A stretch of 64,000 nt of DNA from Octopus sinensis. Lineage: Eukaryota. A program made the translations under genes and the position numbers. The notes below the pieces were generated by a model. It made no database searches, was not told the DNA's origin, and worked only from the letters and a program-made list of their open reading frames with translations. This document shows positions 6,501 to 60,755 of the stretch, in pieces. The stretch is from positions 46,562,001 to 46,626,000 of the forward strand of contig NC_043014.1 of assembly GCF_006345805.1 (NCBI RefSeq). Reading direction: 5' to 3'. How positions within the stretch are numbered: position 1 is the first letter of the stretch; every line of letters starts with the position of its first letter.

Positions 6501-9500
6501 ACTATGGTGGAGCACTAATCTAATCTTAATTATTCTGTCACTTACTCTGACTACTCTCGATTACCTTATCTACCCATTTTTCGGCGATAAGCATGCCCAC
6601 ACCCCCGACTCCGTCAGTATTCCCAGCCCAGAAAATCTTGTACCTCTGTCCTTTGCCTGTGAGGAACCTAGCAGAACCTCCTCTCCACCTCACTTCTTGA
6701 ATGCAGCATATATCAACCCACCTCCGTTCAAGCAATTCAACTATCTCGCCAGATCTGCCTTTCAGTGTGCCGACGTTGAGGGTGCCAACCCTGAGGCTGT
6801 GGGTGGGGGTGGAAGTGGTATTGGTCCTAATAGCGTCATGTACCTGAAAAGAAAACTCGCGTTTGGCAGTATTCATAGACAAACAATGGAACTTAAGTTC
6901 AAACCTCGTATACAACACTAAACATATCTTGCAATGACTGACCACTACCTTTTATGGAAGGAGGTGGGGGTGGCGTATGACTTTGAGTGTATAAGGGAGA
7001 CAAGGATGAGAAAAATTTAGGACTTCCTGTACCGGTGGTGGGGGTGGGAGGGCAGGTGCACCGCGAAAACCGGGCGGCAGCCATTCCTTTCTTAGGAGAG
7101 AAATAGTTATTAGTAGCTATAAATAAATACCTAAATTTTGCCTAATCTATGGGAGAAGCGTGGACGATAAGGAGCTATAAATTATAAATACATTTATTCT
7201 ATATCTACGAGGCGTGAGACTGATCGATAAAATAAAATAAAATTAGGGGCAAGCTTTAAGATTAAATATATATTTAACACAAGACATGAGACAACGATAT
7301 ATAATTAAGATGAACTATAGAATTATATGTACATATAAAAAGACACAAGGCGTGAGGCTAAATTTCACAAGTCATAACAATAATACTAATAGAGATAAAA
7401 CAGGGCTAACTAAAAGATCAGATCAGTTGCAGATAGTTAAGTAGGTACACGGGTTGAAATTAAATATAGATTGCTTAGCTTGGATTCATATTTCGTATTT
7501 CGTATTTTTCGTAGGGAGTCGGATACCAGTCTGAATTCAAGTGAGGCCGTTGAAATCAGTCGCTGGTTTATATGCATATAGGGTTGCGGAGAGAGGGGCC
7601 GAATGGCGATCGAAAGAGATATAAGACAATTGAAGAGGAACGGGGGGGGGGGGGGGGGTCGTGGCCCACCAAGAATCGTCCGGCAGCCATTCCTTTCTTA
7701 GGAGAGAAATAGTTATTAGTAGCTATAAATAAATACAGTTTTATATATATAGATGTGTTTCAGTCATTGGATTACAGCCATGCTGGGGCACTACTTAGAA
7801 GTGTTTTAATCAAACAAACCCACCCCAGTACTTGCTTTTAAGTCTGGTTAGAGCATCAGGCTCAGAATCATGAGGTAGTGAGTTCGATTCCTGGACCAGG
7901 CTGTGTATTGTGTTCTTGAGCAAGACACTTTATTTCATGTTGCTCCAGTTCACTCAGCTGTAGCAATGAGTTGCAGCATCACTGGTGCCAAGCTGTATCG
8001 GCCCCTTTGCCTTTCCCTCGGATAACATCAGTGGTGTGGAGAGGAGAGGCTGGTATGCATGGACGACTGCTGGTCTTCCATAAGCAACCTTGGACTTGTG
8101 CCTGGGAGGGTAACTTTCTAGGTGCAATCCCATGGTCATTCATGACCAAAGGGGTCCTTTACCCTTTACTTATTCTAGCAGTCTCTTTTACTGCAAAGGG
8201 GCACGAGTGCTGATCTTCATAACTGGTTGAAATCTTTCATTCTCAGTTGAAAAGAGGTAGTTGCACTTTTAGGACCACTCTATTTCTTATGCAGTGCCAT
8301 CTGGTGTCCTGCAGTTTTCTTTGTTGCATATGTTAATGAAATAGATACCAAATTGAAGTATGTTATTTTTATAAATAATGCAAACAACATCAGGCTGTCA
8401 AGAGATAAAAAGTGTATTGTGCATCTTTCTTTACTTAACTTTTGGCTGCTTTCGGTTCCTTCTTTTACCCCTTTTCTGATGAGCTGTAGTGCATCTGAGA
8501 ACTATATGCAATCTCTTTACTATTTGCATAGGCGCAGGAGTGGCTGTGTGGTAAGTCGCTTGCTTACCAACCACATGGTTCCAGGTTCAGTCCCACTGCG
8601 TGGCACCTTGGGCAAGTGTCTTCTAAAATACCCCCGGGCTGACCAAAACCTTGTGAATGGATTTGGCAGACAGAAATTGAAAGAAGCCTGTTGTATATGT
8701 GTATGTGTATGTATATGTGTGTGTGTATGTATGTATATGTGTGTATATGTATGTATATGTGTGTGTTTGTGTATATGTTTGTGTGTCTGTGTTTGTCCCC
8801 ACCACCATCACTTGGCAACTGATGCTGGTGTGTTTACGTCCCTGTAACTTAGCAGTTCGGCAAAAGACACCAACAGAATAAGTACTAAGCTTACAAAGAA
8901 CAAGTCCTGGGGTCGATTTGTTAAACTAAAGGCGGTGCTCCAGCATGGCCGCAGTCAAATGACTGAAACAAAAAACGAACACACACACACACACACACAC
9001 ATCCACATCACATTTACTGTATAGATTGTATCATCATCATCATCATCATCATCGTTTAACGTCCGTTCTCCATGCTAGCACGGGTTGGATGGTTCGACCG
9101 GGGATCTGGGAAGCCAGAAGGCTGCACCAGGCTCCGGTCTTATCTGGCAATGTTTCTACAGCTGGATGCCCTTCCTAACACCTATGTATGTCTATAGATA
9201 ACAGAATTGTTTGTAAAAAGAGCTTATTTATGTGAAGAGAAATGGAATTGCTGAATAAAGATGGTGACTTGACTTTTTTGTCTGCTTTCTTTCCAGAGTC
9301 TCTCTGCTCAAAGATTTCCAATAGCTTCAATTTATTCATCGCTATCCTAGTTAGCATGGCAAACTGGCTTATTAAATTCTTCAATAGAATATCTAGGAAT
9401 TACCGACGTGTCGCTTATACTTTGACTGATGACATGAGGAAAGAGAAGTTGAAAATACAGGTTAGTTCTTTTTTATTAATATGTTTTGTAATACTTCATG

Positions 9501-15600: not shown

Positions 15601-18074
15601 CACTCTCTGTGTCACGCTGAATATCCCCCGAGAACTACGTTAAGGGTACACGTGTCTGTGGAGTGCTCAGCCACTTACACGTTAATTTCACGAGCAGGCT
15701 GTTCCGTTGATCGGATCAACCGGGACCCTCGTCGTCATAACCGACGGAGTGTTTGTCAGCGTGGAGGCGCAATGACCCAGTGGTTAGGGCAGTGGACTCG
15801 CGGTCGTAGGATCGCGGTTTCGATTCCCAGACCGGGCGTTGTGAGTGTTTATTGAGCGAAAACACCTAAAAGCTCCACGTGGCTCCGGCAGGGGATGGTG
15901 GTGATCCCTGCTGTACTCTTTCACCACAACTTTCTCTCACTCTTACTTCCTGTTTCTGTTGTACCTTGTATTTCAAAGGGCCGGCCCTGTCACTCTCTGT
16001 GTCACGCTGAATATCCCCAAGAACTACGTTAAGGGTACGCGTGTCTGTGGAGTGCTCAGCCACTTACACGTTAATTTCACGAGCAGGCTGTTCCGTTGAT
16101 CGGATCAACCGGAACCCTCGTCGTCATAACCGACGGAGTGTTTGTCAGCGTGGAGGCGCAATGGCCCAGTGGTTAGGGCAGCGGACTCGCGGTCGTACGA
16201 TCGCGGTTTCGATTCCCAGACCGGGCGTTGTGAGTGTTTATTGAGCGAAAACACCTAAAAGCTCCACAAGGCTCCGGCAGGGGATGGTGGTGATCCCTGC
16301 TGTACTCTTTCACCACAACTTTCTCTCACTCTTACTTCCTGTTTCTGTTGTACCTTGTATTTCAAAGGGCCGGCCTTGTCACTCCCTGTGTCACACTGAA
16401 TATCCTCAAGAACTACGTTAAGGGTGCACGTGTCTGTGGAGTGCTCAGCCACTTACACGTTAATTTCACGAGCAGGCTGTTCCGTTGATCGGATCAACCG
16501 GAACCCTCGTCGTCGTAACCGATGGAGTGCTTCCATCCCATTAGTGTTTGTCAATAGATATGCTTTCAAATCAAGCATTTTCCATCTCTTCTTCTATGTT
16601 CAACTGTTATTTTTTTTGCTTTTTTAAATGGGAAACAAAACCTTCTCTTTGTTAATTGCTTAATACTGTATTTTCCAACATACCATTTGAATATTTCTGA
16701 TCAAAATTTACAGGTGTAGGAGTGGCTGTGTGGTAGGTATCTTGCTTATGAACCACATGGTTCCGGATTCAGTCCCACTGCGTGGCACCTTGGGCAAGTG
16801 TCTTCTACTATAGCCTTGGGCTGACAAAAGCCTTGTGAGTGGATTTGGTAGACGGAAACTGAAAGAAGCCCATTGTATATATGAGTATATATGTTTGTGT
16901 GTCTGTATTTTTCCCCCACCAACATCGCTTGACAACCAATGCTGGTGTGTTTACATCCCCGTAACTTAGTGGTTCGGCAAAAGAGACCGATAGAATAAGT
17001 ACGAGGCTTACAAAGAATAAGTCCTGGAGTGGATTTGCTCGACTAAAGGCGGTGTTCCGGCATGGCCACAGTCAAATGACTGAAACAAGTAAAAGAGTAA
17101 AGAGAGTAAAAAGAGAGAGTCGACTCAATCACCAAGACAATCTTGAAAAACCAAAACAATTCCATGTGAAATGCAGCAGAATTAGGAAAGATAGGGACAA
17201 CATTTGAATGTTTTATATTACATGCTTACACTATATACTACATTGATTTGTATGCTAGAAAATAAATTAATTGTTTAATGGCTTATTTCAAATGTTTAAT
17301 GATAATTTTATTCAATACTCTTTTACTCTTTTTACTCTTTTACTTGTTTCAGTCATTTGACTGCGGCCATGCTGGAGCACCACCTTTAGTCGAGCAAATC
17401 GACCCCGGGACTTATTCTTTGTAAGCCCAGTACTTATTCTAACGGTCTCTTTTTGCCGAACCGCTAAGTGACGGGGACGTAAACACACCAGCATTGGTTG
17501 TCAAGCAATGCTAGGGGGACAAACACAGACACACAAACACAGACACACAAACACAGACACACACATACATATATATATATATATACATATATACGACAGG
17601 CTTCTTTCAGTTTCCGTCTACCAAATCCACTCACAAGGTATTGGTCGGCCCGGGGCTATAGCAGAAGACACTTGCCCAAGATGCCACGCAGTGGGACTGA
17701 ACCCAGAACCATGTGGTTGGTTAGCAAGCTACTCACCACACAGCCACTCCTGCGTAATGTGTTTTTAATTATTTCTTTTTCTTCTTATTCTTCTTCTTCA
17801 TATTATTGCAGTTTGCAAGACATTGATAATGCAGAAGAGGAAAATGAATTCGAGTTGGCCCAACCAGTGTTCTACAGATTACTCGTAGCGTTCTATTACA
17901 TGCTCATCTCTCGCTCCGAGTTGGTTTGCTATTTTCTCATCGTCCTCAACCAAATGATGTCTGCTAGTCTGCTCTCCATGCCTCTGCCAATTATGGTCTT
18001 CCTCTGGGGAATGCTGTCTGTTCCACGACCATCCAAGACATTTTGGGTCACCGTTATCACCTATACTGAGGTAG

Positions 18075-18898: not shown

Positions 18899-20775
18899 GT
18901 ATTACTACTGCTGCTGCTGGTGCAGCTACTACTACTGCTGCTGCTACTACTACTACTACTACTACTAAAAAACAGCAAGCTGGCAGAATTGCTAGCATGC
19001 CAGGTGAAATGCTTGGCCATATTTCATCCGTCTTTTATGTTCTGAGTTCAAATTCCACCGAGGCTGACTTTGCCTTTCATCCCTTTGGGGGTCGATGAAA
19101 TAGTGAATAAGTTCGACTTTTATAATCCTGTATTGTGTTGTATTACTTCTGTTTCCAGAATGACAAATGCACATTAGAAATTATGAAATTTAAGTTTAAT
19201 TTTGTTTTGACTTATTTAAGTCAGTTACAGTGAGATTTAAATGGTTTATTTTTTCTTCTTCTCTTGTTTACAGGCTATCGTCGTATTAAAATACTTGTTC
19301 CAGTTTACATTCTTCCCTTGGAATGATGACGACAATTCTAAAAACTGGAAAAACAATCCATTTTGGCCACCACGAATCTTGGGTATTGAGAAGCAAGATT
19401 ACTATGCAACGTATGATCTTGCCTTACTTTTAGTTCTCTTCATACACAGAACCATTTTAAAGGTACGAGACATTCTTGGTTTATTCCTCTTATTCTACAG
19501 GATTACAGCAAATGTGTGTATATGGGAGGTCCATTGTTAGTTAGTTAGTTAGTTAGTTAGTTAATTTGGCTCAAAAGCAAATAGCAAGGCCATGTAGGGG
19601 GACATGGAGTTAAGTACAGGGTGGTGTTCATGTAAAGAGTTCAGGCCACTTGAGGTCCAGGGAGGTTTTGAACAAAGCGGTCGTCGGCATCTTTACCATC
19701 TCGTCTGGCAGCTTGTTCCACGGATCCGCAACCCGGACGGAGAAAGCTCCTCTCCTTCGATTGAGATGAAATCGTCGCAGGTAGAGCTTTTCGGAATGAC
19801 CCCGCAGCCGACGCTCTGGAGCAGGAGTGAAGAACAGTTCTTTCGAGAGGTTACACTTTCCGCTTATGATGCTGTGGGCGAGAATGAGATCACCACAGCG
19901 GCGGCGTTTTTCAAGAGAGAATGCTGTCACCAAGAGGACTTTGATAAATAGCACGCGTTTCCTCACACTTTAACTTATTCAATAGATACTTTGTTTCCAT
20001 GTGCAGAAAATTCACCTTAAGAAATTTCACTGTAAAGGAAAATTCATCATATGGACATCGTCCGTTCATCGTTTAACGTCCGCTTTCCATGCTAGCATGG
20101 GTTGGATGATTTGACTGAGGACTGGCGAACCAGATGGCTGCACCAGGCTCCAATCTTGATCTGGCAGAGTTTCTACAGCTGGATGCCCTTCCTAACGCCA
20201 ACCACTCCGAGAGTGTAGTGGGTGCTTTTACATGCTACTGACATGAGGGCCAGTCAGGCAGTACTGGCAACGGCCACATTCGAGTGGTGTTTTTTATGTG
20301 CCACCTGCACAAGATCTAGTCCAGTTGCACTGGAAACAACCCCACTCGAATGATAAAGCATTTAAAAAAACAAAAAGCCTGAGATAGGCAAGTCTTTATT
20401 CAATATCAAACATTAAAAGAATGCATAATGAGATAATTTAAAATAAAGTTTCTTTATCCTAAAGCAAGTGTCTTCTACAATAGCCTTGGGCCAACCATAG
20501 CCTTTGAGTGGATTTGGTAGACGGAAACTGAAAGAAGCCCATCGTATATGTGTGTGTGTGTGTGTGTGTGTGTCTGCGTTTATCCCCTCATCATCACTTG
20601 ATAACTGATGTCGGTGTGTTTACAACCCTGTAACTTAGCAGTTCGGCAAAAGAGACCAATATAATAAGTACTAGGCTTACAAAGAATAAGTACTGGGGTC
20701 GATTTGTTTGGCTAAAGGTGGTGCTCCAGCATGGCCACAATCAAATGACTGAAACTAATAAAAGAATATAATATA

Positions 20776-20811
<36 letters not shown>

Positions 20812-21941
20812 TCATCATCGTTTAACGTCCGCTTTCCATGCTAGCATGGGTTGGATGGTTCGACTGGAGTCTGGTAAGCCAGGAGGCTGCACCAGGCTCC
20901 AGTCTGATCTAGCAGTGTTTCTACAGCTGGATGCCCTTCCTAACGCCAACCACTCCGAGAGTGTAGTGGGTGCTTTTTACATGCCACCGGCACATGTGCC
21001 AGGCGAGGCTGGCAACGGCCACGATCAGTTTGTGCTTTTTACGTGCCACCGGCACGGAAGCCAGTCAAGGCAGCACTGGCATCGGCCATGTTCGGATGGT
21101 GCAATTTACGTGCCACCGGCACAGGTATCAAAACTACAATTTCCATTTGATTTTTTGATGTTGATGTACTTGACTCAATAGGTCTCCTCAAACTGTATGT
21201 AACTATAGGAAGGACTTTCTCAAATAAATATTGTGGTTGAATAGTTTAGATCAGTGGTTTTCAACCAGGGTTCCGCGGAACGTTAGGGTTCCGCCAGTAC
21301 AGTGCAGGGGTTCCGCAAGAAGTTACAAAACTGCTAAAATCGGCAGTAATTTTTAATTCTCCTGTGCAGACATGTGTGCATAAGACTATTAAATTATTGC
21401 ACAGGGTTCCTCGAGCCAGTGGAATGTTTCCTTGGGGTTCCGCTCCAGCAAAAAGTTTGAAAAGCACTGGTTTAGATTTTAGATTCCTGTTTGCTTCGAT
21501 TAAGAATTCATAATTTATATCGAACGTTGGGTCCATGAACAAGACACTCATTTTGTGCTGCAATAAAAACATGTCGTATCTAAATTAAATGAATTGCTGT
21601 GTTTTACTGTAGCGTTACGGCTTGTGGAAAGATGCTGAAGATATCACAGCTGATCTGGCAAAAGCTGAAGGAAAGGAACTTAGCCCTCCGGCATCACCTC
21701 AGGTGCAAGATGTGAGTAAATCACTTTTCATTTTTCAATTTTCTCGGTGACACTGGCTTGGCTTGCATGGGTGATAGGAAGCTTGCTTCCCAATCACTTG
21801 CTTTGGGGTTCAATCTCACTGCATGGCTTCTCAGGCAAGTGAGTTCTATTATAGCCATGGGCTGACCAAAGCCTTGTGAGTGGATTTGGTAGATGGAAGC
21901 TAAAAGAAGTCCACTGTATAAATATATAGAAAATACACACA

Positions 21942-21993
<52 letters not shown>

Positions 21994-24900
21994 CTGTGTG
22001 TGTGTATATATTGGTGTGTGTGTATATATATATATCTATGTATGTGTATCTTTGTGTTTATGTTTGTCCCCCCCATCACCGATGAACATAAGGTGTATTT
22101 TTATATGGTAGGAGTTATTGCAACAATGGCAGTCATAGTGGTTAGGATGTTGGACTCATGATTGTAAGGTTGTGGTTTCAATTCCTGGAGCAGACAATGT
22201 GTTGTGTTCTTGAGCAGAACACTTCATTTCATGTTGTTCTACTCAGCTGGCAAAAGTGAGTAAGCCTGTGAGGGACTGGCATCCCATCCAGGTGGGGAAT
22301 GAATATATATATGCCATGAAACTGGGAAACCGTCCCTTGTGAGTCAGTGTGACTTGAGAAGGTAACTTTACCTTTACTTTTTACCTAACGATTCCTGATT
22401 TCTTTGAATCAGAAGAAAGACCGACTTCCATGATGTGCCGGGGTTTATGTCATTTTTGCATTGCTGGGTTTTCCTATCAATGGTGGTGGAGAGAGAGAGG
22501 AGAGAGAAGGGGAGAAAGAGAGAGAGAGAGATAGTGAAAGAGAAAGAGAGAGGGGGAGAGAGAAAGACTTAGAAGACTGAATTCAACAGTTGGCTATGGG
22601 CTGGAAATAGTTTGTGATGTTGGGTTTATATGTCATTTTTCTTATCAATGGTGGTGGCAGAGAGAGTGAGAGAGAGGGGATAGAGAGGAGAGAGAGAGGG
22701 GGGATAGAGAGAAGGAGAGAGAGAGAGGGGATAGAGAGAGGGAGAGAGAGGGGATAGAGAGAAGGAGAGAGAGTGAGAGGGGATAGAGAGAGAGAGAGAG
22801 AGGATATATATAGAGAGAGAGGGGATAGAGAGAGAGAGAGAGGGGTGATAGAGAGAGGGTGAGAGAGAGAGAGAGAGACTCAGAAGGCTGGATTCAACAG
22901 TTGGCCATGGGCTGGAAACAGTTTGGGATGCTGGGTTTATTCCATCAGAAATCTCACTGATTTTCGGTGTTGTTTTATTTGTCTACAGATAGAAAGGAAG
23001 TTTGCTGCCTGTGCTGCTGCCCTCGAAAAGCAGGAATACGACTTCGACGCTGGGCAGGAGTCAGAAGTTGATGTTCCTTTGAAAAAGAAGATGATAGTTA
23101 CTCAAGACCCCAAGGACAACAGTCCCCATATTACCACGGTGGAACCTGAACCTGTAGAAGAAGAAGAAATACAGAAGAGAAAGTAAGGATTTCTATTTCA
23201 TTTTTCTTAAAGTACAATCATCAAGAGGAATTGCTATTTAATCAAGTTTTTGCTTTGTTTTTCTCCCAAGAAATTTGTGGCTATAAAAGGGAATGTGTGA
23301 AGCTAGGATTCATCATCATCATCATCATTTAGCATCCGCTTTCCATGCTAGCATGGGTTGGACGGTTCAACTGGGGTCTAGGAAGCCAGAAGGCTGCACC
23401 AGGCCCAGTCTGATCTGGCAATGTTTCTACAGCTGGATGCCCTTCCTAACACCAACCACTCCATGAGTGTAGTGGGTGCTTTTTACGTGTCACCGGCACA
23501 GGTGCCAGACGGGGCTGGCAAACGGCCACGGTCGGATGGTGCTTTTTACGTGCCACCGGCACAGGGGCCAGGCGAGGCTGTCAAACGGCCACGATCGGAT
23601 GGTGCTTTTTACGTGCCACCAGCATGGAGGCCAGTCGGGGCGGCGCTGGCAACGGCCACGATCGGATGGTTCGCTTACGTGCCACCGGCACTGGTATCAC
23701 AGCTGCAATTTCCATTGATGTTGATCGACTTCGATTTTGGTTCTGATTGTTTCTGCATTTTGTCTGGTGAGAATATGCTTGACACATACCTAATGTAGTT
23801 AAGGGATTCCTAACCGACCCTTTTAGACTAACATTCTTGAGTGCAGTACTTTGGCTTCAGAATATCGTTGCCCATTTATTATTCTGGATTGCATCTGGTT
23901 CTCTTTGAGGATTTTGGTAAAGATTTGTGGAGACATAGAAACTTAGTTTCAAAACAGATAAACATTGACTCCTGTGTGTATGTGTGTGTGTGTATATACA
24001 CACGCATACTTCCACAAATTATGTTTATTATGAGACTTCAAATTACACTGTAATTAATTTTAATAAGACTGTGCTAAATATTAACTGGGATGATGTTTAA
24101 ATGCCATCCTCTCCCACAATTAGATGTGAGCCAAGCCTGTTGGTAAAGGATGGCAATTATCCACGTCTTTGAAAGTACCAGGATTTCAATGGTGTTAAGT
24201 TAAGTTAGGTTAATTTTTTGGCTCAAAAAGCAAAAAGCAAGGCCATGTAGGGGGACATGGAGTTATGTACAGGGAGGGTGTTCATGCAAAGAGTTCAGGC
24301 CATTTCTGGTTAAGGGAGACTTTGAACCGAGCGGTCGTCGGCATCTTCACTATTTCGTTCGGCAGCTTATTCCACGGATCTGCATCCCGGACGGAGAAAG
24401 CTCCTCTCCTTCGATTGAGATGAAATCGTTGCAGATAGAGCTTTTCGGAGTGACCCCACTGCCGACACTCTGGAGCAGGAGTGAAGAACAGCTCTTTCAC
24501 AATGGTGTGTTTGTATATTTTTAGAATGACATTGTAGGGTAGGTATGAAAGGTCAATTTGAAGACAAGACAGGTAAAATATTTGGGCCACATATTAAATG
24601 TTAAAGGGTTAATGTTAAATGTTTAAATTAAATGTTAAAGGACTAATCATCATCATCATCAGCAGCAGCATCATTTAGCGTTCACTTTCCATGCTAGCAT
24701 GGGTTGGACGGTGCAACTGGGGTCTGGGAAGCCAGAAGGCTGCACCAGGCCCAGTCTGATCTGGCAATGTTTCTACGGCTGGATGCCCTTCCTAATGCCA
24801 ACCACTCCGAGAGTGTAGTGGGCGCTTTTTACGTGCCACCGGCACAGGTGCCAGACGAGGCTGGCAAACGGCCACCACGGATGGTGCTTTTTACGTGCCA

Positions 24901-26198
24901 CCGGCACGGGGGCCAGGCAAGGCTGGCAACGACCACGATTGGATGGTGTTTGTTACGTGCCACCAGCACGGAGGCCAGTCGATGCGGTGCTGGCTACGGC
25001 CACGTTCGGATGGTTCTCTTATGTGCCACCGGCACATAATGATGTTGATCGATTTCGAATTTAATTTTGATTTTGATTTTGAAAAAAATCGAAATGTATG
25101 TGTTAAGGGTGGAAGATTTAGGACGACGACAACGACGCAGATGAATTTATGGATGGAAAAAGGATGATGATTGTGTTAACAAAATTTATTTTGTAACCAT
25201 TTAATAAAGCTTTGCATTGTTTTATTGTTGACCTCTTTGCAAAAGGTCATTGCATGTGGCTGTTGCTTCTGTGTTTGTGACATTTTCTTTGCTCTTGCTC
25301 TTCAGTGTTTTAGCAGTTCTTGAAGCAAGGTAAGATATTTTGTTGCATGCGGTGTCGGGTAATCCCTCGTCCCCTTCAATATCCTCCCTCCTGTGTTGCT
25401 GAAACATTTTAACATGCCGTAGGTTTTAGGTGTAGTATTCTATCTGGTTTCCCCTGCTTCATTTTTTTTTTTTTTCACCCGCCGCACTTGCTAATATAAA
25501 TAAACTGACCTTGCTTTTTAGGTTTGGAAGAGATCGATAAAGTGATACACGTGTAGTTTAGAGTTAGAAGATAGAGCGAATGGCAAAAGAACAGGAAGGT
25601 TGTCCAGCCAAACATCTACCCTATCAGATTTCTGTTTTAGTCTCAATAAGGTCAAATTTATCCACCCCATCATCATCATCATCATTTCTTTTGGTTGCAC
25701 GTCGCTGAACGGCTTCCAGATGATTAATATCCTGGGCAAGATAGGGTTTCCAGACCGGTGATGCAAATTCCAGGTGAGGTCTTACCATAGCTATATAAAG
25801 CCGCAGACAGATAGCTGGAGAGCGGCTCACAAAGGATTTGGTGAGTGATGCCAAGACACCCTCAGCCTTCTTGACAATTTTAGCGATGTGTTTTGTCCAA
25901 CGCAAATCACTGTCGACAATAACACCCAGGTCACGTTCACATGAAGACTTTTTGTGATTAGTGTTGTGGAGGGAGTAGGTGGACACTGGGTTTCTCCTCC
26001 CAAAATGTATGGTGGTACATTTGTCCACAGCCAGCTTGAGTTGCGAGTCCATGATCCACTGCTGCATTGTGTCCAGGTCTGCTTGCAATAGAGATCTATA
26101 GTGTGCAGGATTTGACCTCTTTATTTCGAGGTACAGCTTAATGTCATCTGCATATTTCAGCACTGTGGCATTCTTTAAGTTGGCATCTATGTCATTAA

Positions 26199-32200: not shown

Positions 32201-33142
32201 GGGGGAAGGGTATCTTTTTTTCTTCAGAAATGTAAATAAATACAATCTGTTTCTTAAACGAGGGACATATTCATACGGCACAGAATGTTTTTTTACCTCA
32301 ATAGACGTCATTGATTGGTTGAAATTGCAGAAATTTAAGAAAAAAAAGAAAACCAAATATCTTACAAACTATAGAATTTTCTCAAAAAGCCAAGAGAAAA
32401 AGATGTTTTATAAACACATTCTACCAGTATACGAAGTTTAAAATTTTTTAGTTACCTAGAAATTATGTTAAAAACTGCTGTTTAAACCGAAAAAAGATCT
32501 CTTTTGATCATGTTGCCAAGTGAATAAAATTCTTTCCTTTGTATACATCTGTAACATCTCTGTTTTTTACCTCTCTCTCTCTTATGTACTTACAATACAT
32601 CAATGTGTATAACGTATAATTACATGATGTAAATATTGTTTGTTTATCTGTTGCAGGTTCGTATCAGTTATGAAACCATTCCAGAATTTCTATCGCCAAA
32701 TGACCAACTCCGCCTACAATGCAGTTGTCGATGTATATGCACCAATGTTTGTCTGTGACTTTTTGGCCTTCCTCATTGTTGTCTTTGGATATTGGGCCTT
32801 CGGACCTGTCGTAAGTAATACCATTTTTTCTCTCTATCAGAGCTCAGTTTTCCAAATGTTTGTTGTTACCTTCTCCGTTTCCTTTTGAAATTATTTTTTT
32901 TTGCCAAATCTCTTTACTCATTGATCTTTTCTGTTCAAGATATACAGAATTAAAGGTTTAAATTTAAAAAAAAAAAAAATTTGTCAAGCAAGCGTGGCTG
33001 TGTGGTAAGAAGCTTGCTTCCCAACCACATGTTTCTGGGTTCAGTCCCACTGCATGGCATCTTGAACAAGTGCTTTCTTCTATAGCCTCGGGCTGACCAA
33101 AACCTTGTGAGTGGATTTGGCTGATGGAAATGGAAAGAAGCC

Positions 33143-36700: not shown

Positions 36701-39700
36701 AACAAGTAAAAGAGTAAAAGAGAGTATATAAATTTTTCATCTCAGGAATATAGAATTAAATTTTTTTGCTATTGAAAGCCATATTTTATTGAATTATTGT
36801 TTTATTATAACGGCTGATATTGGTATTCTTTTAATTTGGCAGCAATCTGGTGAAGGAAGTGTTACAACATATCTTGAAGAAAACCGAGTAAGTGTTCAAT
36901 TAACCTTATGTTATGTCTTTCTCTTCCTCTATCTCTCTCTCAATTTATTTTGATAACTGAATCCATGGATGCAGTGAAGTAACCCCAGGTTTTTACTGTT
37001 AACCCTTTCATTACTGTATTTATTTTGAGATGTTCTGTGTTTCTTTCAACTATTTTAAATATAACAAAGAATTGAGTAAAATAACTTAATTATCATTAAT
37101 CTAGTGTTAGGAACGTAAATTGTGTCTAAGGCTTGGTGGAAGATTTTAATTCAAAACTTATGAAAACAAGACATTTTACACAGAGCCAGAGCCGGTTTTG
37201 GCCGGGTTAGTAACAAAAGGGTTAAAGACACGAGGCCCATATCTCATTAGATAGACTGTTATTCTTCTTACTTTATTACAATTTCTCTGTATCCTCCAAT
37301 CAAGTAATTTGAAAATCGAGCAGTTACTAACAAAACTCAAATTTCTCTCTCTCTCTCTCTTCAGGTTCCAATCCCATTTCTTGTGATGCTGGTTGTCCAA
37401 TTTATGTTCATCATCATTGACCGTGCTCTGTTCCTTCGTAAGTGTGTCCATGGGAAATTTATTTTCCAAGTTGCCCTTGTCATCATTGTCCATATCTGGC
37501 TCTTCTTCATCCTACCAGCAATTACAAACAGGTGAGCCGACTTCATTCTTTCTTTCTATTGTTCTTTTCAATTCCACATTTACCTTTATCATCTCTTTTC
37601 TCTATTTTTACACTCTCCAGTACTCCATCTTCTTCACCTTCTGTTCCTGGGAAGGTCACTGGGAGTAACTGAAAACTCTGTTGGTTATGATGACTCTCTG
37701 CAATGGTTATGATGACTCTCTGCAATGGTTGTGATGACTCTCTGCAATGGTTATGATGACTCTCTGCAATGGTCATGATGACTCTGCAATGGTTATGATG
37801 ACTCTCTGCAATGGTTATGATGACTCTCTGCAATGGTCATGATGACTCTCTGCAATGGTTATGATGACTCTCTGCAATGGTCATGATGACTCTCTGCAAT
37901 GGTCATGATGACTCTCTGCAATGGTCATGATGACTCTCTGCAATGGTCATGATGACTCTCTGCAATGGTCATGATGACTCTCTGCAATGGTCATGATGAC
38001 TCTCTGCAATGGTCATGATGACTCTCTGCAATGGTCATGATGACTCTCTGCAATGGTTATGATGACTCTCTGCAATGGTCGTGATGACTCTGCAATGGTC
38101 GTGATGACTCTATGCAATGGTTATGATGACTCTCTGCAATGGTTATGATGACTCTGCAATGGTTATGATGACTCTCTGCAATGGTTGTGATGACTCTCTG
38201 CAATGGTTATGATGACTCTCTGCAATGGTTATGATGACTCTGCAATGGTTATGATGACTCTGCAATGGTTATGATGACTCTCTGCAATAGTTATGATGAC
38301 TCTGCAATGGTTATGATGACTCTCTGCAATGGTTATGATGACTCTCTGCAATGGTTATGATGACTCTGCAATGGTTGTGATGACTCTCTGCAATGGTTGT
38401 GATGACTCTCTGCAATGGTTGTGATGACTCTCTGCAATGGTTATGATGACTCTCTGCAATGGTTGTGCTGACTCTCTGCAATGGTTGTGATGACTCTCTG
38501 CAATGGTTGTGATGACTCTCTGCAATGGTTATGATGACTCTCTGCAATGGTTGTGCTGACTCTCTGCAATGGTTGTGATGACTCTCTGCAATGGTCATGA
38601 TGACTCTCTGCAATGGTCATGATGACTCTCTGCAATGGTCATGATGACTCTCTGCAATGGTCATGATGACTCTCTGCAATGGTCATGATGACTCTCTGCA
38701 ATGGTCATGATGACTCTCTGCAATGGTCATGATGACTCTCTGCAATGGTCATGATGACTCTCTGCAATGGTCATGATGACTCTGCAATGGTCGTGATGAC
38801 TCTATGCAATGGTTATGATGACTCTGCAATGGTTATGATGACTCTCTGCAATGGTTGTGATGACTCTGCAATGGTTGTGATGACTCTCTGCAATGGTTAT
38901 GATGACTCTCTGCAATGGTTATGATGACTCTCTGCAATGGTTATGATGACTCTCTGCAATGGTTATGATGACTCTGCAATGGTTATGATGACTCTCTGCA
39001 ATGGTTATGATGACTCTCTGCAATGGTTATGGTGACTCTCTGCAATGGTTATGATGACTCTGCAATGGTTGTGATGACTCTCTGCAATGGTTGTGATGAC
39101 TCTCTGCAATGGTCGTGATGACTCTCTGCAATGGTCATGATGACTCTCTGCAATGGTCATGATGACTCTCTGCAATGGTCATGATGACTCTCTGCAATGG
39201 TCATGATGACTCTCTGCAATGGTCATGATGACTCTCTGCAATGGTCATGATGACTCTCTGCAATGGTCATGATGACTCTCTGCAATGGGTGTGAGAGATG
39301 ATCTTTTTAACTGGTTGGAGTCCTTTGTTCTCAGCTGAAAAGAGATTGTCCTGGTTCTAGGACAGCATTCTTCACCCTGTGAGATGTCATCTGGTGTACT
39401 GCAGAGATCTGTTCTTGGCCTCTGTTTGTTTGTTGCATACATTAACGACATAAATACCAACTTCAAGAATGCCACAGTGCTGAAATGTGCAGACGAGATC
39501 AAGCTGTACTTTGAGATAAAAAGGACAGAACCTGAGCACTGTAGATCTGGACACAATGCAACAATGGATCATGGTCTGGCAACTCAAGCTGGCTGTGGAC
39601 AAGTGTGCTACCATGCATTCTGGGAGGAAAAACCCAGTGTCCGCATACTCTATATTAGTGTCCACAACACTAATATCAAGAATTCTTCTTGTGAACATAA

Positions 39701-42700
39701 TCAGGGTATTATTGTCAGCAGCGACTGGCGCTGGACAAAGCATGTCCCTAAAATTGTCAAGAAGGCCGAAGGTGTCTTGGCATCACTCAGCAAGACCTTT
39801 GTCAGCCACTCTCCAGCTATCTATTTAAGGCTGTATATGGCTATGGTGTGGCCACACTTGGAATTTGCATCACCAGTCTGGAACCCTTATCTTGCTCGGA
39901 CATTGACCTCCTGGAAATTTTTCAGAGATGTGCAACCAAGAAAATACCCTCCATCAGGCACCTACCATACTCTGAACGCCTTGCTTCCCTGAACATAGAT
40001 ACATTGAAGCTCCGACGTGTGGCAACTGACTTAGTAAACACCCACAAAACTATTAACCATCACACCAACAACCACCTTCAGCATCTTTTTGAGCTCCATG
40101 TGTCTAACTCACGTGGGCATGCCTACAAAAGTCAGAAAAAAAGCACGGCTCCCATGACTTTCAGAAACATTTTTTCATACTCAGAGTTGCTGAAGCAGGG
40201 AACAAACTGCCTGCATCCGTAGTTGGTTGCCAAGACATTGCATCCTTCACAACCTCCATGCTTCCTAAAATTCGCCAACGCTACACCTGATATCTCCCCC
40301 TCCATATGCATGCACACATGTATATCATGACTCTTACGCTTTAGAGGAACCCCTTTTCAGGTGCTTGTATTTGTGACAGTACTCTTTCAGTCCTTACCCA
40401 ACCTGCAAGACCATAAGCAAGGATAAACACAGAACCCTATATCTTTTAATCTCTAGCCCTTTTCTATTTCATGTTTCCCCTTATTGTCTTCCTATATTTT
40501 TACATTCTTCCCTCTTTCTACGCAATTTCCGTCGGATATGGTCTAATGTTGTTGTTCTTCTTGTTTTGATTTATTCTCTTTTCAGAATGTTTATCAAAAA
40601 CATTCCAGCAATGTTGTGGTACTTTGTGAAATGCATCTATTTTGCTCTGTCTGCACATCAAATTCGTTCAGGTTATCCAACCAGGATTCTTGGAAACTTC
40701 CTTACCAAAAATTATTCATACCTCAACTTGTTCCTGTTTAAAGGGTAAGCGCTTTCAGAACTTTCCTCCATTCATTTCTGCAACATCTTGTCATCTTGCC
40801 TCGACCTTTAATTTAACATAGACCGAATATTTGGTGTTGACATATCTGAACCTATTTCTTTATTACCCACAATGGGCTAAACACAGAGAGGACAGACAAG
40901 GAGATTAAGTCGATTACATCGACCCCAGTGCATAACTGGTACTTAATTTATCGACCCCGAAAGGATGAAAGGCAAAGTCGACCTCAGCGGAATTTGAACT
41001 CAGAACGTAACGACAGACGAAATATGGCTACGCATTTCGTCCGGCGTGCCAACGTTTCTGCCAGCTCACCGCCTTACATATCTGAACCGTATCTGAACCG
41101 TAAGGTGCCATTCTGTGTATAATTCTGCGGTTTACCATCTAGAAAATATTTGCTCCCATATTTAGACCAGAGTTTCAGGATCACTCATGACACTCACGTC
41201 GGGGTCACCAATTGTAAAAGGATGAGAGTTCAGGAACACTGGAGGGGTGTCCAATCTGATCTTGTCACATACAAGTTGAAGAAACGGAATCAAAGTCAGG
41301 CTGTCTTCAATAACAACAATAGTAGTTTATTCTGTGGTTCTCAGGTAAAACATATACATATGTATTTCCTGTGAGGAAACCGGCAGCCGAGTCCACAGGA
41401 CTGTTTACAAATGTTTACTTGTGTGAGCCAAGAAGATACGGTGTTCGTTGAGAGAAGTCGAGCCATGTCCGACCGCTAGCGCTGCTCTGCCAGAAAGACC
41501 GATTCAGTGGTCACGCTTTCAGGTTGCAGTTCCTGCGCATGCGCATACTTCTGGTGGCCAACCGGAAGTAATCCAATTCTGCGCATGCACGCTGAAACTT
41601 CCACTGTAGCATCACTACAACACTAACAAGGACAAAGGAACACATATAACGAACTCATTAGACTGTTACATAACTGACTGTTTGATACTTTCTAATCAGA
41701 GACATTTGTTGACAAATGGTTGGCCCTGTTTGATTTTTAGAGTGGAGAATACATCATCTAGGGAAGATATATATTCGAGTTGTGTCTTCAGTCTCTTTGA
41801 AAGATATGAGCAACTTCAGCTATTTTCAACATTGGACTGTCTTACATATAATATCTGTTTATAGCTAGCTAATAATTGCTGCTTTAGAGGCGTCTCTGTC
41901 TTTGCCGTTAACTCATTTGTAGCACTAATTAGGGGATATGAAATAAATTGTAGGGTGGTTAGTCCACATTGGGAGCATAGGGCTGGGCCAGTTTTCTTGT
42001 TTCTCTCACGTATGTATTTCTCCCCTGGATAGGACGCCAGTCAATTGCAGAATTACTCATTTTTACCTGCTGAGAGTGGACTGGAGCAACGTGAAATAAA
42101 ATGTTTTGCTCAAGAACACAACATGCAGCCTGGTCTGGGCTTCGAACTCACAACCTCACGATCGTAAGCTCGACGCTCTAACCACTGAGCCATGCACCTA
42201 TGTATACTTTCTCAATAAAAGCTGGTAATTCCTCAAAATATGCGACATTCATATGTCAAGCTAACAAGGCGCTCACAGGTTGCATAACTGAAATTTCATT
42301 CAATGCCTAGTTCTAAGATTATTGTGAAGTTCAAATTACTTGACTACAACAGCCAAATCACACTCTACTATCTTCAAAAGTTGAAAAGGAAAGGACACGT
42401 TGACTAATGTAGTTCTTGATACGCCTAAACAGGATGACCACGGTTGGAATGTTTTCAATCGTTGGGCAACTCTATCAGGGCTGACCCTAAAACTGACGAT
42501 AAATTTCTTCAAATCAGTAACAAGGGAGATTACTCTTTCTTACTGTTTACTACCCTTGATATCTTGTACGTTATACAGAAATTGAACTGAGACACTTGGA
42601 TTGCAGAAAATAAGGCGGCGAGCTGGCAGAAACGTTAGCACGCTGGACGAAATGCTTACAGGTATTTCGTCTGCCGTTACGTTCTGAGTTCAAATTCCGC

Positions 42701-44559
42701 CGAGGTCAACTTTGCCTTTCATCCTTTCAGGGTCGATAAATTAAGTACCAGTTCCGTCCTGGGGGTCGATGTAATGGACTTAATCTCTTTGTCTGTCCTT
42801 GTTTGTCCCCTCTGTGTTTAGCCCCTTGTGGGTAGTAAAGAAATAGGTATTTCCTCTGCTGCTATATTCTGAGTTCAAATTCTGCCGAGGTCGACTTTGC
42901 CTTTCATCCTTTCGGGGTCGATAAATTAAGTACCAGTTCCATACTGGGGTCGATGTAATCGACTTAATCCCTTTGTCTGTCCTTGTTTGTCCCCTCTGTG
43001 TTTAGCCCCTTGTGGGTAGTAAAGAAATAGGTATTTCGTCTGCCGTTACGTTCTGTGTTCAAATTCCGCCGAGGTCAACTTTGCCTTTCATCCTTTCGGG
43101 GTCGATAAATTAAGTACCAGTTACGTACTGGGGGGGGGGGGGGTCGATGTAATGGACTTAATACCTATGTCTGTCCTTGTTTGTCCCCTCTATGTTTAGC
43201 CCCTTGTGGGCAATAAAGAAATAAGAAAATACAATTCAGGAAACATTTAGACTAAGAATTTGCTAGAATTTCCAGTAGTTTTTAGCTTGTCCTTTCTACT
43301 GCTGGAGGAAGGAACGTTACCTATTCTAAGAAGTGGCCGTGTGACTAACAGCTATATTCAACATGGAGAGGGATGGTTAGTGATAATAAAAGAAAACAGT
43401 TGTTTCAGCATAAAAAAAAAATAGGAGACATCTCACCAATTCTGATGCGGTAAAAGTGTTGTAAAAGAACTATCAGATTCACTGTCCATTTTCTTGTCGC
43501 CTCCACCAACTCTGTTCTTTGTTTCAGGTTTCTCGTCATTCCATTCCTTCTGGAACTTCGTGCTCTCATGGACTGGATGTGGACAGACACCACCTTGGCG
43601 CTGGGCAGTTGGCTACAGATGGAAGATATCTATGCCAATATATTTGTTCTGAAGTGCTGGCGGCATGCCGAAGCTGTAAGTTTTCGTCTTGTACATGTTT
43701 ACCATTATTATTACTCTTACTCTTTTCACTCTTTTACTTGTTTCAGTCAGTTGACTGCGGCCATGCTGGAGCAGCGCCTTTAGTCGAGCAACTCGACCCC
43801 GGGACTTATTCTTTGTAAGCCCCAGTACTTATTCTATCGGTCTCTTTTGCCGAACTGTGTTTACCATTATTATTACTCTTACTCTTTTTACTCTTTTACT
43901 TGTTTCAGTCAGTTGACTGGGGCCATGCTGGAGCAGCGCCTTTAGTCGAGCAACTCGACCCCGGGACTTATTCTTTGTAAGCCCCAGTACTTATTCTATC
44001 GGTCTCTTTTGCCGAACCGTGTTTACCATTATTATTACTCTTACTCTTTTTACTCTTTTACTTGTTTCAGTCAGTTGACTGGGGCCATGCTGGAGCAGCG
44101 CCTTTAGTCGAGCAACTCGACCCCGGGACTTATTCTTTGTAAGCCCCAGTACTTATTCTATCGGTCTCTTTTGCCGAACCGTGTTTACCATTATTATTAC
44201 TCTTACTCTTTTTACTCTTTTACTTGTTTCAGTCAGTTGACTGGGGCCATGCTGGAGCAGCGCCTTAGTCGAGCAACTCGACCCCGGGACTTATTCTTTG
44301 TAAGCCCCAGTACTTATTCTATCGGTCTCTTTTGCCGAACGTGTTTACCATTATTATTACTCTTACTCTTTTTACTCTTTTACTTGTTTCAGTCAGTTGA
44401 CTGCGGCCATGCTGGAGCAGCGCCTTTAGTCGAGCAACTCGACCCCGGGACTTATTCTTTGTAAGCCCCAGTACTTATTCTATCGGTCTCTTTTGCCGAA
44501 CCGCTAAGTGACGGGAACATAAACACACCAGCATCGGTTGTCAAGCAATGCTAGGGGGA

Positions 44560-50257: not shown

Positions 50258-51198
50258 TTTGACCGACCAGTCCGTCAGGCGTCCATTTGACACCGCTGGT
50301 CACAGCACGTTGTCCACTCCTCTCTGGATCGCGCCTTTCTCATCCACGTGATCCCAATCGTCCTCTTGAAATCGTCACTCCAATATATATATATATATAT
50401 TTATATATATTCATATGTCTGTATATCTGTGTTGGTCCCCCAACATCGCTTGACAACCGATGCTGGTGTGTTTACGTCCCCGCAACTTAGCAGTTCGGCA
50501 AAAGAGACCGATAGAATAAGTACTCGGCTTACAAAGAATAAGTCCTGGGGTCGATTTGCTCGACTAAAAGTGTTGCTCCAGCATGGCCGCAGTCAAATGA
50601 CTGAAACAAGTAAAAGAATAAAGAGTATTGCTAGTAAGATGTTTTAGTTTCAAGATTTATGCTAATATTCAGAATCTCTCCCTTTTTTCCATTCAAAGTA
50701 TCCCTATTTTGCTTTCTGCCGTCTCTCTTCTCTCTGTCTTACATTCATACTAACTCCTTACATATTATAATAATCACATCTATAAATACGTACATACTTC
50801 CGAAACAGAGAGCCAGCAGTTTTCTAACCAGCTATGACCCAGAAGATATTACAATAATCACTATCAACGGCGAATCAACGTCTGTGTGGGGGATAAGTCC
50901 ACCAAGTCAGAAGAAGCTCATTCGTGACCTCATGGAGGCCAAACATATGGACATGGATCTTGATGTCTCGTTTACAAGGTAACTGCTTTTTTCATGATTT
51001 TATTTTTCTTTTTTTTAAAGAATCTTTAGTATAGGCGCAGGAGTGGCTGTGTGGTAAGTAGCTTGCTGACCAACCACATGGTTCCGGGTTCAGTCCCACT
51101 GCGTGGCATCTTGGGCGAGTGTGTTCTGCTATAGCCCCGGGCTGACCAATGCCTTGTGAGTGGATTTGGTAGACGGAAACTGAAAGAAGCCTGCCGTA

Positions 51199-60307: not shown

Positions 60308-60755
60308 TTAGCTTTGAGAGGAGACTGTTAGGATTCAGGTATGATAATTAATAATTTCTGATTGGTTATTGATTGGTCATTAATTATAAGCAACTCATTG
60401 ATGTAATTGCCAATCAGGACCCACATATGAAAGCTCAGGTTAACATCCATATTTGGACATGTTGATGTATCTCCTCCAGCCACTGAAAACGAGCAAATTC
60501 TTGACCGAAGCTTTATATTTCTTTCTCCATCTTCAGGAGAATTAATCATTTATGTCATAGTTGAGACAGTTCGCTAAAGAGATTAATCAAGCTAAACTGT
60601 TTTTTATTATACAATTATCTCCAGAGGAAATAATAAGCTTGCCAATATTTTGTTAATCTGCAGAACATTCATTGATCTCGGCTGTGATGATCTTAAAATA
60701 GTAAGATGGAGATGTGGCGATTGATCGAGTTTTGATAAAAAGAAAAATCAACACT

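What the first reader, a model, noticed from the sequence alone, without database searches (positions are those of the whole stretch)
25306..25329. Candidate 24-nt neural-type micro-exon in PIEZO with UGC and Rbfox motifs
Seen: TGTTTTAGCAGTTCTTGAAGCAAG is symmetric phase 2-2 and adds N-VLAVLEA-R. It has a long pyrimidine tract, TGC at -16 and -10, an AAG|GTAAGA donor, and TGCATG both upstream (25251) and downstream (25344). Known: UGC near the 3' splice site is the Srrm3/4 eMIC enhancer of bilaterian neural micro-exons, and UGCAUG is the Rbfox site. Inference: a neuron-specific PIEZO isoform; with the 11+37 pair, at least four in-frame loop variants are possible.
Basis: partly seen in the sequence, partly recalled or inferred. 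Interest (0 to 1): 0.75.

Follow-up and report, generated by a model that had tools for sequence, protein, structure and literature searches.

The report
Candidate 24-nt PIEZO microexon, conserved in octopods
A 24-base stretch inside an intron of a cephalopod PIEZO touch-channel gene looks like a real, optional mini-exon, because a second octopod genome has a matching in-frame mini-exon in the same intron; whether it is used only in neurons cannot be tested here.

Summary
Window 25306-25329 (cttcag|TGTTTTAGCAGTTCTTGAAGCAAG|gtaaga) lies on the + strand in a 9.5-kb phase-2 intron of a PIEZO gene, between exons 22989-23182 and 32657-32810. Including it replaces one Lys with N-VLAVLEA-R.

- **Splice sites:** they score as well as or better than most of the gene's real exons. 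It is the single best microexon-sized AG..GT pair in the window on either strand.
- **Conservation:** the closest homologue is Argonauta hians PIEZO. Its orthologous 1.87-kb intron has, as its best candidate, a 27-nt (or 24-nt) in-frame open microexon with the same CTTCAG|T acceptor and an identical GCAAG|GTAAGA donor. The body sequence differs.
- **Negative controls:** the same ancient intron in Lottia and in another mollusc contig holds no candidate.
- **Motifs:** the UGC cluster and the two UGCAUG sites are unlikely by chance in this genome, but both are absent in Argonauta.

My reading is a probably genuine, cephalopod-restricted cassette microexon at the junction between the disordered THU8-THU9 loop and THU9. 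Neuron-specific, eMIC/Rbfox-controlled use is plausible but untested, because no RNA data were reachable. It is a new member of a known kind and of moderate interest.

The parts
22989..23182 (+). Upstream PIEZO exon B (IERKFAAC...EEEEIQKR + AA). It encodes the acidic disordered THU8-THU9 loop and ends in phase 2 (AA|gtaagg).
   Evidence: The A. hians orthologue L001 16475-16744 ends AAA AA|gtaaga in the same phase.
25080..25660 (+). An island of sequence that is single-copy within the window, between two repeat copies. It carries the candidate exon.
   Evidence: Self-BLAST. 24639-25079 and 25660 onward are repeated in the window, while 25080-25660 is not.
25238..25298 (+). UGC cluster upstream of the 3' splice site: TGC at -68, -55, -42, -16 and -10.
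   Evidence: Empirical p is 0.005 for five or more in 70 nt and 0.027 for two or more in -20..-3. The cluster is absent from 11 real exons of the gene.
25251..25256 (+). Upstream TGCATG (Rbfox-type hexamer) at -55.
25283..25305 (+). Polypyrimidine tract (UCU/CUC-rich, 2 G) plus the acceptor AG. A possible branch point is tgtgAc at 25280.
   Evidence: Acceptor PWM score is 7.06, 12th of 3,618 AG sites on the + strand. The AG-exclusion zone is 60 nt.
25306..25329 (+). Candidate 24-nt cassette microexon, phase 2-2. Inclusion turns ...QKR-K-FVSVMK... into ...QKR-N-VLAVLEA-R-FVSVMK...
   Evidence: The positional counterpart is A. hians L001 17769-17795.
25330..25335 (+). Donor AAG|GTAAGA.
   Evidence: Donor score is 6.83, 6th of 3,937 GT sites on the + strand. 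It is one of only 10 AG|GTRAG sites on the + strand. The 11-mer GCAAG|GTAAGA is identical in A. hians.
25344..25349 (+). Downstream TGCATG at intron position +15.
25248..25260 (+). 5' arm of a possible 13-bp RNA stem (5 G.U pairs, duplex -15.2 kcal/mol). It pairs with 25342-25354 and would loop out the exon with both of its splice sites.
   Evidence: The whole-region z-score is only -1.07, and no counterpart exists in A. hians.
25342..25354 (+). 3' arm of that possible stem.
32657..32810 (+). Downstream PIEZO exon C (G + FVSVMKPFQNFYRQ...YWAFGPV). It encodes the pre-TM33 helix and TM33 of THU9.
   Evidence: It maps to mouse Piezo1 from residue 1953.

Best explanation
Window 25306-25329 is most likely a genuine cassette microexon of a cephalopod PIEZO gene, restricted to the cephalopod lineage. 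It sits in an ancient phase-2 intron six codons before the conserved Pro of the pre-TM33 helix.

**Shown**
- Both splice sites are competent, and the frame and ORF are preserved.
- A positional counterpart exists in a second octopod.
- No counterpart exists in two non-cephalopod molluscs.

**Inferred**
- The spliceosome defines the 24-nt exon through its strong 5' splice site and its UCU/UGC-rich 3' region.
- Skipping joins AA|G to give Lys. Inclusion inserts eight net residues (N-VLAVLEA-R) where the disordered THU8-THU9 cytoplasmic loop meets structured THU9 (about mouse Piezo1 residue 1950).
- This lengthens and makes more hydrophobic the segment leading into the pre-TM33 helix. It could change how that loop couples to the blade/anchor region.
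- In this genome the UGC cluster and the flanking UGCAUG sites make Srrm234-eMIC and/or Rbfox-type neuronal control the most likely regulation. That step is inference only.
For: - **Host gene and phase:**
- **Splice-site strength:** acceptor 7.06 and donor 6.83, against 10 real exons scoring -2.6 to 12.7 and 1.3 to 7.9. It is the best microexon-sized pair in 128 kb.
- **Strong acceptors are often real:** at least 4 of the other 11 acceptors that score as high belong to confirmed exons.
- **Orthologous intron in A. hians (L001 16745-18613):** its top candidate is 17769-17795, tccttcag|TAGTAACTGGACCTCAATAAAGGCAAG|gtaaga. It is 27 nt, or 24 nt from a tandem CAG|TAG acceptor, and it is in frame and open (N-SNWTSIKA-R). 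It shares T at exon +1, GC at donor -5/-4 and A at +6. The PWM either ignores or disfavours all four positions.
- **Background rate:** across 240.5 kb of both loci and both strands, only three candidates pass score, frame and ORF. These are the two orthologous ones and one repeat-derived site. The rule-based scan agrees.
- **Negative controls:** the Lottia intron (1.16 kb) and the L003 intron (0.49 kb) have best sums of 0.75 and 2.7, with nothing in frame.
- **Motif statistics:**
- **Literature on SRRM3/4 and eMIC exons:** these carry UGC between branch point and AG, UCUC-rich tracts and, in mammals, strong 5' splice sites (10.1101/2024.09.17.613571). In flies they are enriched in ion channels (PMC8797185).
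Against: - No transcript evidence could be reached. The protein collections hold no cephalopod PIEZO apart from the A. hians gene model, and that model skips the exon.
- The exon body and the encoded peptide are not conserved between the two species (p=0.7). The hydrophobic VLAVLEA contrasts with the polar SNWTSIKA.
- Whole-region similarity does not single out the orthologous site. The flanks align only weakly.
- UGC and UGCAUG are absent from the A. hians flanks.
- Score thresholds were set after the fact, and the PWM came from memory.
Confidence: 0.6

Rival explanations
1. It is a chance pseudo-exon. Two good but unused splice-site look-alikes happen to lie 24 nt apart in a long, repeat-rich intron, and the Argonauta site is an independent coincidence.
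For: - Long introns carry decoy sites.
- The sum criterion gives an expectation of up to 0.55 per strand before frame and ORF filtering.
- The exon body is not conserved.
- The regulatory motifs are not conserved.
Against: - The joint occurrence of an in-frame, open, high-scoring candidate in both orthologous introns has a background rate of about 0.004 per kb. That gives roughly 0.04 x 0.008.
- The two sites are identical at four positions that the PWM does not favour.
- Two mollusc control introns are empty.
Confidence: 0.22
2. It is a constitutive small exon that gene predictors missed. The true protein would always contain N-VLAVLEA-R.
For: - Microexons are commonly missed by ab initio annotation.
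- Both splice sites are strong rather than weak.
- Vertebrate PIEZO1/2 carry an extra helical stretch constitutively at this place, e.g. ...LLAVGHKIKHVFISG|IQSIYRP....
Against: - Direct B-to-C splicing is in frame, and this is what the A. hians model uses.
- Lottia and L003 have no such exon.
- The peptide is unconstrained between the two octopods.
Confidence: 0.1
3. The conserved element works at the RNA level rather than as coding sequence. One possibility is a decoy or intermediate splice-site pair that helps remove the intron. Another is an exon-looping stem formed by the two UUGCAUG-containing arms.
For: - A 13-bp stem (25248-25260 with 25342-25354, -15.2 kcal/mol) brackets the exon. The chance of such a bracket is about 0.04 by my estimate.
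- Only the bases next to the splice sites are conserved.
Against: - The fold z-score is -1.07.
- A. hians has no comparable stem.
- Frame and ORF are preserved in both species, including a 3-nt length difference, and an RNA-only role does not require that.
- The A. hians intron is only 1.9 kb, so it needs no help for removal.
Confidence: 0.05

Closest known systems
Alternatively spliced cytoplasmic-loop exons of mammalian PIEZO2 (exons 10, 18, 19, 22, 33, 35, 40) and PIEZO1.1 (exon 30 skipping)
   Same: - Both are in-frame optional exons in disordered intracellular loops of a PIEZO channel.
- In mammals they are cell-type specific, with many variants in sensory neurons and one prevalent variant in lung and bladder.
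- They change permeation, inactivation or tension sensitivity (PMC12934605, PMC12490864, PMC8924262).
   Different: - Those exons are longer; exon 30 of Piezo1, for example, encodes 24 aa.
- They lie in other loops. Exon 35 is in the THU7-THU8 loop, and exons 30/33 encode the lateral plug.
- Orthology with this site was not shown. I could not establish whether exon 40 lies in the THU8-THU9 loop.
- Here nothing is known about expression or function.
eMIC (Srrm234 / SRRM3/4)-dependent neural microexons of bilaterians
   Same: - The length is 24 nt and a multiple of 3.
- UGC motifs lie between the putative branch point and the AG.
- The pyrimidine tract is UCU/CUC-rich, and the 5' splice site is strong.
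- The host gene is an ion channel (10.1101/2024.09.17.613571; PMC8797185).
   Different: - The 3' splice site is not weak.
- The UGC motif is not conserved in the Argonauta counterpart.
- Typical neural microexons are well conserved in sequence, whereas this one keeps only its boundaries.
- Dependence on eMIC is untested.
Rbfox-regulated cassette exons
   Same: UGCAUG lies within 60 nt on both sides. The downstream site at +15 is in the classical enhancer position. The position rule is from my own knowledge.
   Different: - An upstream site usually represses inclusion.
- Neither site is conserved in A. hians.
- The two sites may instead pair with each other.
C. elegans pezo-1 and other invertebrate PIEZO isoform diversity
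   Same: A single invertebrate PIEZO gene is diversified by extensive alternative splicing (PMC12951647).
   Different: The pezo-1 isoforms differ mainly through alternative N-termini and large segments, not through a microexon at this junction.

Membership tests
PIEZO mechanosensitive channel gene (host) | THU9-anchor, THU and cap domains in the order typical of PIEZO | tested here: met
   PF24874 2.6e-94 (1-238/238), PF23188 3.3e-19, PF12166 5.3e-13. PDB hits to PIEZO1/2 at 1e-34.
PIEZO mechanosensitive channel gene (host) | The closest relatives are PIEZO proteins of the expected clade | tested here: met
   The best hit is the Argonauta hians protein P0152, 834 bits, followed by Lottia. Exon order is colinear with L001.
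Cassette microexon | Length of 27 nt or less (51 at most), a multiple of 3, with no stop in the host phase | tested here: met
   24 nt, phase 2-2, reading N-VLAVLEA-R.
Cassette microexon | Competent AG acceptor with a pyrimidine tract, and a GT donor | tested here: met
   Scores of 7.06 and 6.83, at or above most real exons of the gene. It is also the top pair in the window.
Cassette microexon | Presence in related species at the orthologous intron | tested here: met
   A. hians L001 17769-17795 keeps the same boundaries and frame, although the body differs. No counterpart exists in Lottia or L003.
Cassette microexon | Both inclusion and skipping seen in mRNA | not testable with these tools
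   No cephalopod transcript data were reachable.
eMIC/SRRM3/4-dependent neural microexon | UGC close to the 3' splice site, between branch point and AG, with a UCUC-rich tract | tested here: inconclusive
   Met in the window: TGC at -16 and -10, five in 70 nt, p 0.005. Not met in A. hians, which has none within 150 nt.
eMIC/SRRM3/4-dependent neural microexon | Long branch point-to-AG distance and a weak 3' splice-site context with a strong 5' splice site | tested here: inconclusive
   The 5' splice site is strong, and the AG-exclusion zone of 60 nt is within the range of the other exons. The branch point was only guessed (tgtgAc at -26).
eMIC/SRRM3/4-dependent neural microexon | Neural-specific inclusion that depends on the eMIC domain | not testable with these tools
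   This needs RNA-seq across tissues or a minigene assay.
Rbfox-regulated exon | (U)GCAUG in the flanking introns near the exon | tested here: met
   Sites at 25251 and 25344. There are only 15 on the + strand, so the chance is about 2e-4.
Rbfox-regulated exon | Conservation of the motif in orthologues | tested here: not met
   The nearest TGCATG in A. hians is 256 nt upstream, and there is none downstream within 300 nt.
Orthologue of a mammalian PIEZO2/PIEZO1 alternative exon | The same intron or position as a known vertebrate alternative exon | not tested
   The intron position itself is shared with a fish Piezo1 (...LLSG|IQSVYRP). I could not place Piezo2 exon 40, because the Szczot 2017 text is not held.

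The most novel reading that the evidence does not exclude
Octopods evolved their own neuron-specific PIEZO microexon at the loop-THU9 junction, independently of mammals. It would be read out by the ancestral Srrm234-eMIC and/or Rbfox machinery and would tune mechanosensitivity in arm and sucker sensory neurons. This would be convergent evolution with the cell-type-specific PIEZO2 loop exons of mammalian touch neurons.
Probability: 0.25. Interest if true: 0.65.

Novelty: new member of a known kind. Interest (0 to 1): 0.45.

Why it matters
If transcripts confirm it, this would be the first described splice variant of a cephalopod PIEZO that I could find in the searchable literature.

- It would give a natural 8-residue insertion exactly where the unresolved THU8-THU9 loop enters the structured channel. 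That is a convenient handle for asking what this loop does in gating.
- It would add a case of lineage-specific microexon gain in an ion channel. Recent comparative work reports recurrent, convergent evolution of neural exons in the same genes (10.64898/2026.09.05.749416), and this would fit that pattern.
- Practically, it flags an exon that current cephalopod gene models probably miss.

Tried and rejected
- **First protein search:** the query included the microexon peptide. It returned only two distant fragments and no cephalopod isoform.
- **Representative search:** it gave no close relative. The best real homologue was 57% identical. The top hit, P0003, is an artefactual duplicated model.
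- **BLASTN of the intron and of the unique island against the A. hians locus:** it found only repeats. Local alignment did not pick out the orthologous site, so homology rests on structured features and not on overall similarity.
- **Transposon origin, rejected:** 25080-25660 is single-copy within the window. The 14-mer GGTAAGATATTTTG shared with three A. hians repeat copies does not extend beyond those 14 bases.
- **Recursive splice site or poison exon, rejected:** the acceptor and donor are not juxtaposed, and the frame has no stop.
- **Literature:** Szczot 2017 is not held. The octopus splicing preprint has no supplement held as text.
- **Apparent 14-aa gap in a Liparis Piezo1 model:** this turned out to be a mis-called donor, not a small skipped exon.

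Full report
**Observation.** The candidate exon is 25306-25329, TGTTTTAGCAGTTCTTGAAGCAAG. It is preceded by ttttctttgctcttgctcttcag and followed by gtaaga. TGC lies at -16 and -10. TGCATG lies at 25251-56 and 25344-49.

**Host gene.** Stop-free stretches on the + strand give a colinear series of PIEZO exons.

| Exon | Coordinates |
|---|---|
| A | 19274-19462 |
| A2 | 21613-21711 |
| B | 22989-23182 |
| C | 32657-32810 |
| D' | 36843-36887 |
| D | 37365-37531 |
| E | 40586-40744 |
| F | 43528-43675 |
| G | 46609-46794 |
| H | 48828-48920 |
| I | 50809-50978 |
| J | starts at 52925 |

- I missed A2 at first and recovered it from the Argonauta model.
- The spliced translation hits Piezo_THU9_anchor over its full length (2.6e-94), plus THU_Piezo1 and Piezo_cap.
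- Exon B ends AGA AA|gtaagg and exon C begins G TTC GTA. The intron is therefore phase 2, and direct splicing gives Lys.
- Including the candidate gives AAT GTT TTA GCA GTT CTT GAA GCA AGG, that is N-VLAVLEA-R.
- The candidate lies 2.1 kb into a 9,474-nt intron full of repeats. It sits on a 580-nt island that is single-copy within the window.

**Is it more than chance?** I scored all AG and GT sites with a simple metazoan PWM written from memory.
- The candidate scores 7.06 for the acceptor and 6.83 for the donor. That ranks fourth and second among the candidate plus ten real exons.
- Only 12 of 3,618 AG sites and 6 of 3,937 GT sites on the + strand score as high. At least four of the other eleven strong acceptors belong to confirmed exons.
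- Among about 21,700 AG..GT pairs spaced 3-51 nt on both strands, this pair has the top combined score. Expected numbers per strand are 0.055 (both scores at least as high) or 0.55 (sum at least as high), before asking for frame and an open reading frame.
- A PWM-free rule gives the same picture. The rule requires AG|GTRAG and a YAG with at least 12 of 18 pyrimidines upstream.

**Related species.** The first protein search found nothing useful. A longer query found a hypothetical protein of Argonauta hians (P0152) as the best relative. It is about 90-95% identical through THU9 and the anchor, but divergent in the loop. The window therefore comes from an octopod-like cephalopod.

Its locus (L001, GCA_054771915.1) has the same exon order. 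Exon B' ends AAA AA|gtaaga and exon C' starts G GCT GTC, so the intron position and phase are the same. The intron is only 1,869 nt.

Scanning that intron, the best candidate by a wide margin is L001 17769-17795, tccttcag|TAGTAACTGGACCTCAATAAAGGCAAG|gtaaga.
- It is 27 nt, or 24 nt from the tandem CAG|TAG acceptor.
- It is in frame and open, reading N-SNWTSIKA-R.
- It shares CTTCAG|T and an identical GCAAG|GTAAGA with the window. That includes four positions the PWM ignores or disfavours: exon +1 T, donor -5 G, donor -4 C and donor +6 A.

Across 240.5 kb (both loci, both strands) only three candidates pass the same score, frame and ORF filter. They are these two and one repeat-derived site. That puts the background near 0.004 per kb. 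The expectation is then about 0.04 for the window's intron and about 0.008 for the Argonauta intron.

**Negative controls.** The same phase-2 intron, six codons before the conserved Pro, exists in three other places:
- Lottia gigantea (L002 4548-5707);
- a marine-metagenome mollusc contig (L003 2937-3421);
- apparently a fish Piezo1.

Neither mollusc intron has any candidate.

**Caveats on conservation.**
- The exon body is no more similar than chance (p=0.7).
- The downstream flank aligns only weakly (p 0.002 against random segments, 0.04 against shuffles).
- Unguided alignment does not find the site.
- What is conserved is a splice-competent, frame-preserving shell. The peptide is not conserved.

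**Regulatory motifs.**
- TGCATG occurs 15 times on the + strand. One within 60 nt on each side of the exon has a probability of about 2e-4.
- TGC occurs five times in -70..-1 (empirical p 0.005) and twice in -20..-3 (p 0.027). None of 11 real exons matches this.
- These features fit published descriptions of SRRM3/4 and eMIC targets. Those have a UCU_CUC...UGC enhancer between branch point and AG, with a UGC present in 74-79% of targets and a strong 5' splice site (10.1101/2024.09.17.613571). In flies the targets have UGC near the 3' splice site, UCUC tracts and enrichment in ion channels (PMC8797185).
- The Argonauta counterpart has a GUU-repeat tract with no TGC within 150 nt. Its nearest TGCATG is 256 nt upstream.
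- The two UUGCAUG-containing 13-mers can also pair (25248-25260 with 25342-25354, 13 bp with 5 G.U, -15.2 kcal/mol), which would loop out the exon. The fold as a whole is not unusual (z -1.07), and Argonauta has no equivalent.
- The motif evidence is therefore real for this genome but unsupported by conservation. It does not establish neuron specificity.

**Position in the protein.** The junction Lys aligns just before mouse Piezo1 residue 1953. The Met of VMKPF aligns with human PIEZO1 Tyr1939, and the junction falls near mouse Piezo2 residue 2233. It is 24 residues ahead of the Pfam THU9 domain.

From my own knowledge, this is where the unresolved THU8-THU9 loop ends and the resolved pre-TM33 segment begins. 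Vertebrate PIEZOs carry a longer, helix-like stretch at this position constitutively. The hydrophobic VLAVLEA could extend that segment, but the polar Argonauta peptide argues against a conserved structural role. A change in linker length or flexibility is the safer inference. I could not model the isoform.

**Comparison with known systems.** Optional in-frame exons in disordered PIEZO loops are well known.
- Piezo2 has alternative exons 10, 18, 19, 22, 33, 35 and 40. They have neuron-subtype specificity and affect permeation, inactivation and tension sensitivity.
- Piezo1.1 lacks exon 30 (PMC12934605, PMC12490864, PMC8924262).
- C. elegans pezo-1 is also heavily spliced (PMC12951647).

I found no report of a PIEZO microexon or of cephalopod PIEZO isoforms. 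This is therefore a new member of a known kind.

**Verdict.**

| Reading | Probability |
|---|---|
| Genuine, probably alternative, cephalopod-restricted PIEZO microexon | about 0.6 |
| Unused pseudo-exon | about 0.2 |
| Constitutive exon that annotation missed | about 0.1 |
| RNA-level element only | about 0.05 |

Neuronal eMIC/Rbfox control is plausible, about 0.25 overall. Testing it needs RNA data that these tools do not provide.

Noticed in passing
window 21613-21711, with TGCATG at 21764 and 21820: PIEZO exon A2 (RYGLWKDAEDITADLAKAEGKELSPPASPQVQD, 99 nt, or 90 nt from an earlier donor) has two of the window's 15 plus-strand TGCATG sites at +53 and +109 of its downstream intron. A-to-B splicing without it stays in frame, so it could itself be an Rbfox-type cassette exon.
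   Followed up: partly
window 36843-36887: A 45-nt exon (QSGEGSVTTYLEENR) lies between the TM33 exon and the next exon. It is conserved as 48 nt in A. hians (L001 about 19542-19604) and is present in Lottia. I found no support for splitting it.
   Followed up: partly
window 25248-25260 and 25342-25354: The two TGCATG sites sit in near-identical 10-mers (TTGCATGTGG and TTGCATGCGG). These can form a 13-bp stem enclosing the microexon and both of its splice sites.
   Followed up: yes
window 52925-52926: A very strong acceptor is followed two bases later by GTAAGA (cttcag|AG|gtaaga). It looks like a recursive splice site, but it is the true start of the next PIEZO exon ((R)GKRSPQSPGTFSKQFQV, matching A. 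hians SKRSPKSPATFGKQFQV).
   Followed up: partly
window 3751-6950 (minus strand) and many other places: Long minus-strand open frames lie in the upstream part of the window. One is a retrotransposon-like ORF (...FVPGKSTTDAIF...) by eye. There are many copies of a short repeat that begins with a CAT/CAC (His-codon) microsatellite, at 2858, 8963, 20762, 23287, 24639, 26199 and 27888. There are also abundant TA/CA microsatellites.
   Followed up: no
window 60700-61430: A tandem array of roughly 120-nt units, seen as repeated ORF peptides on both strands.
   Followed up: no
L001 1-8613 and 10001-46250; L001 53367-53597: The A. hians annotation splits PIEZO into two gene models, an N-terminal one of 1329 aa and a C-terminal one of 839 aa. 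A 65%-identical second copy of the last exon lies about 7 kb downstream.
   Followed up: no
L002 5016-5700 and L004 5142-5178: The Lottia PIEZO model reads through intron sequence in the loop region. The Liparis tanakae Piezo1 model uses a donor 36 nt too early and so loses 12 residues (VGDKIKQVLLSG). Both look like annotation errors and not isoforms.
   Followed up: partly
P0003 (representative library): The top-scoring representative is a 1884-aa protein that carries the same PIEZO segment twice (residues 909-1350 and 1442-1882, identical). It is probably an assembly or annotation duplication.
   Followed up: no
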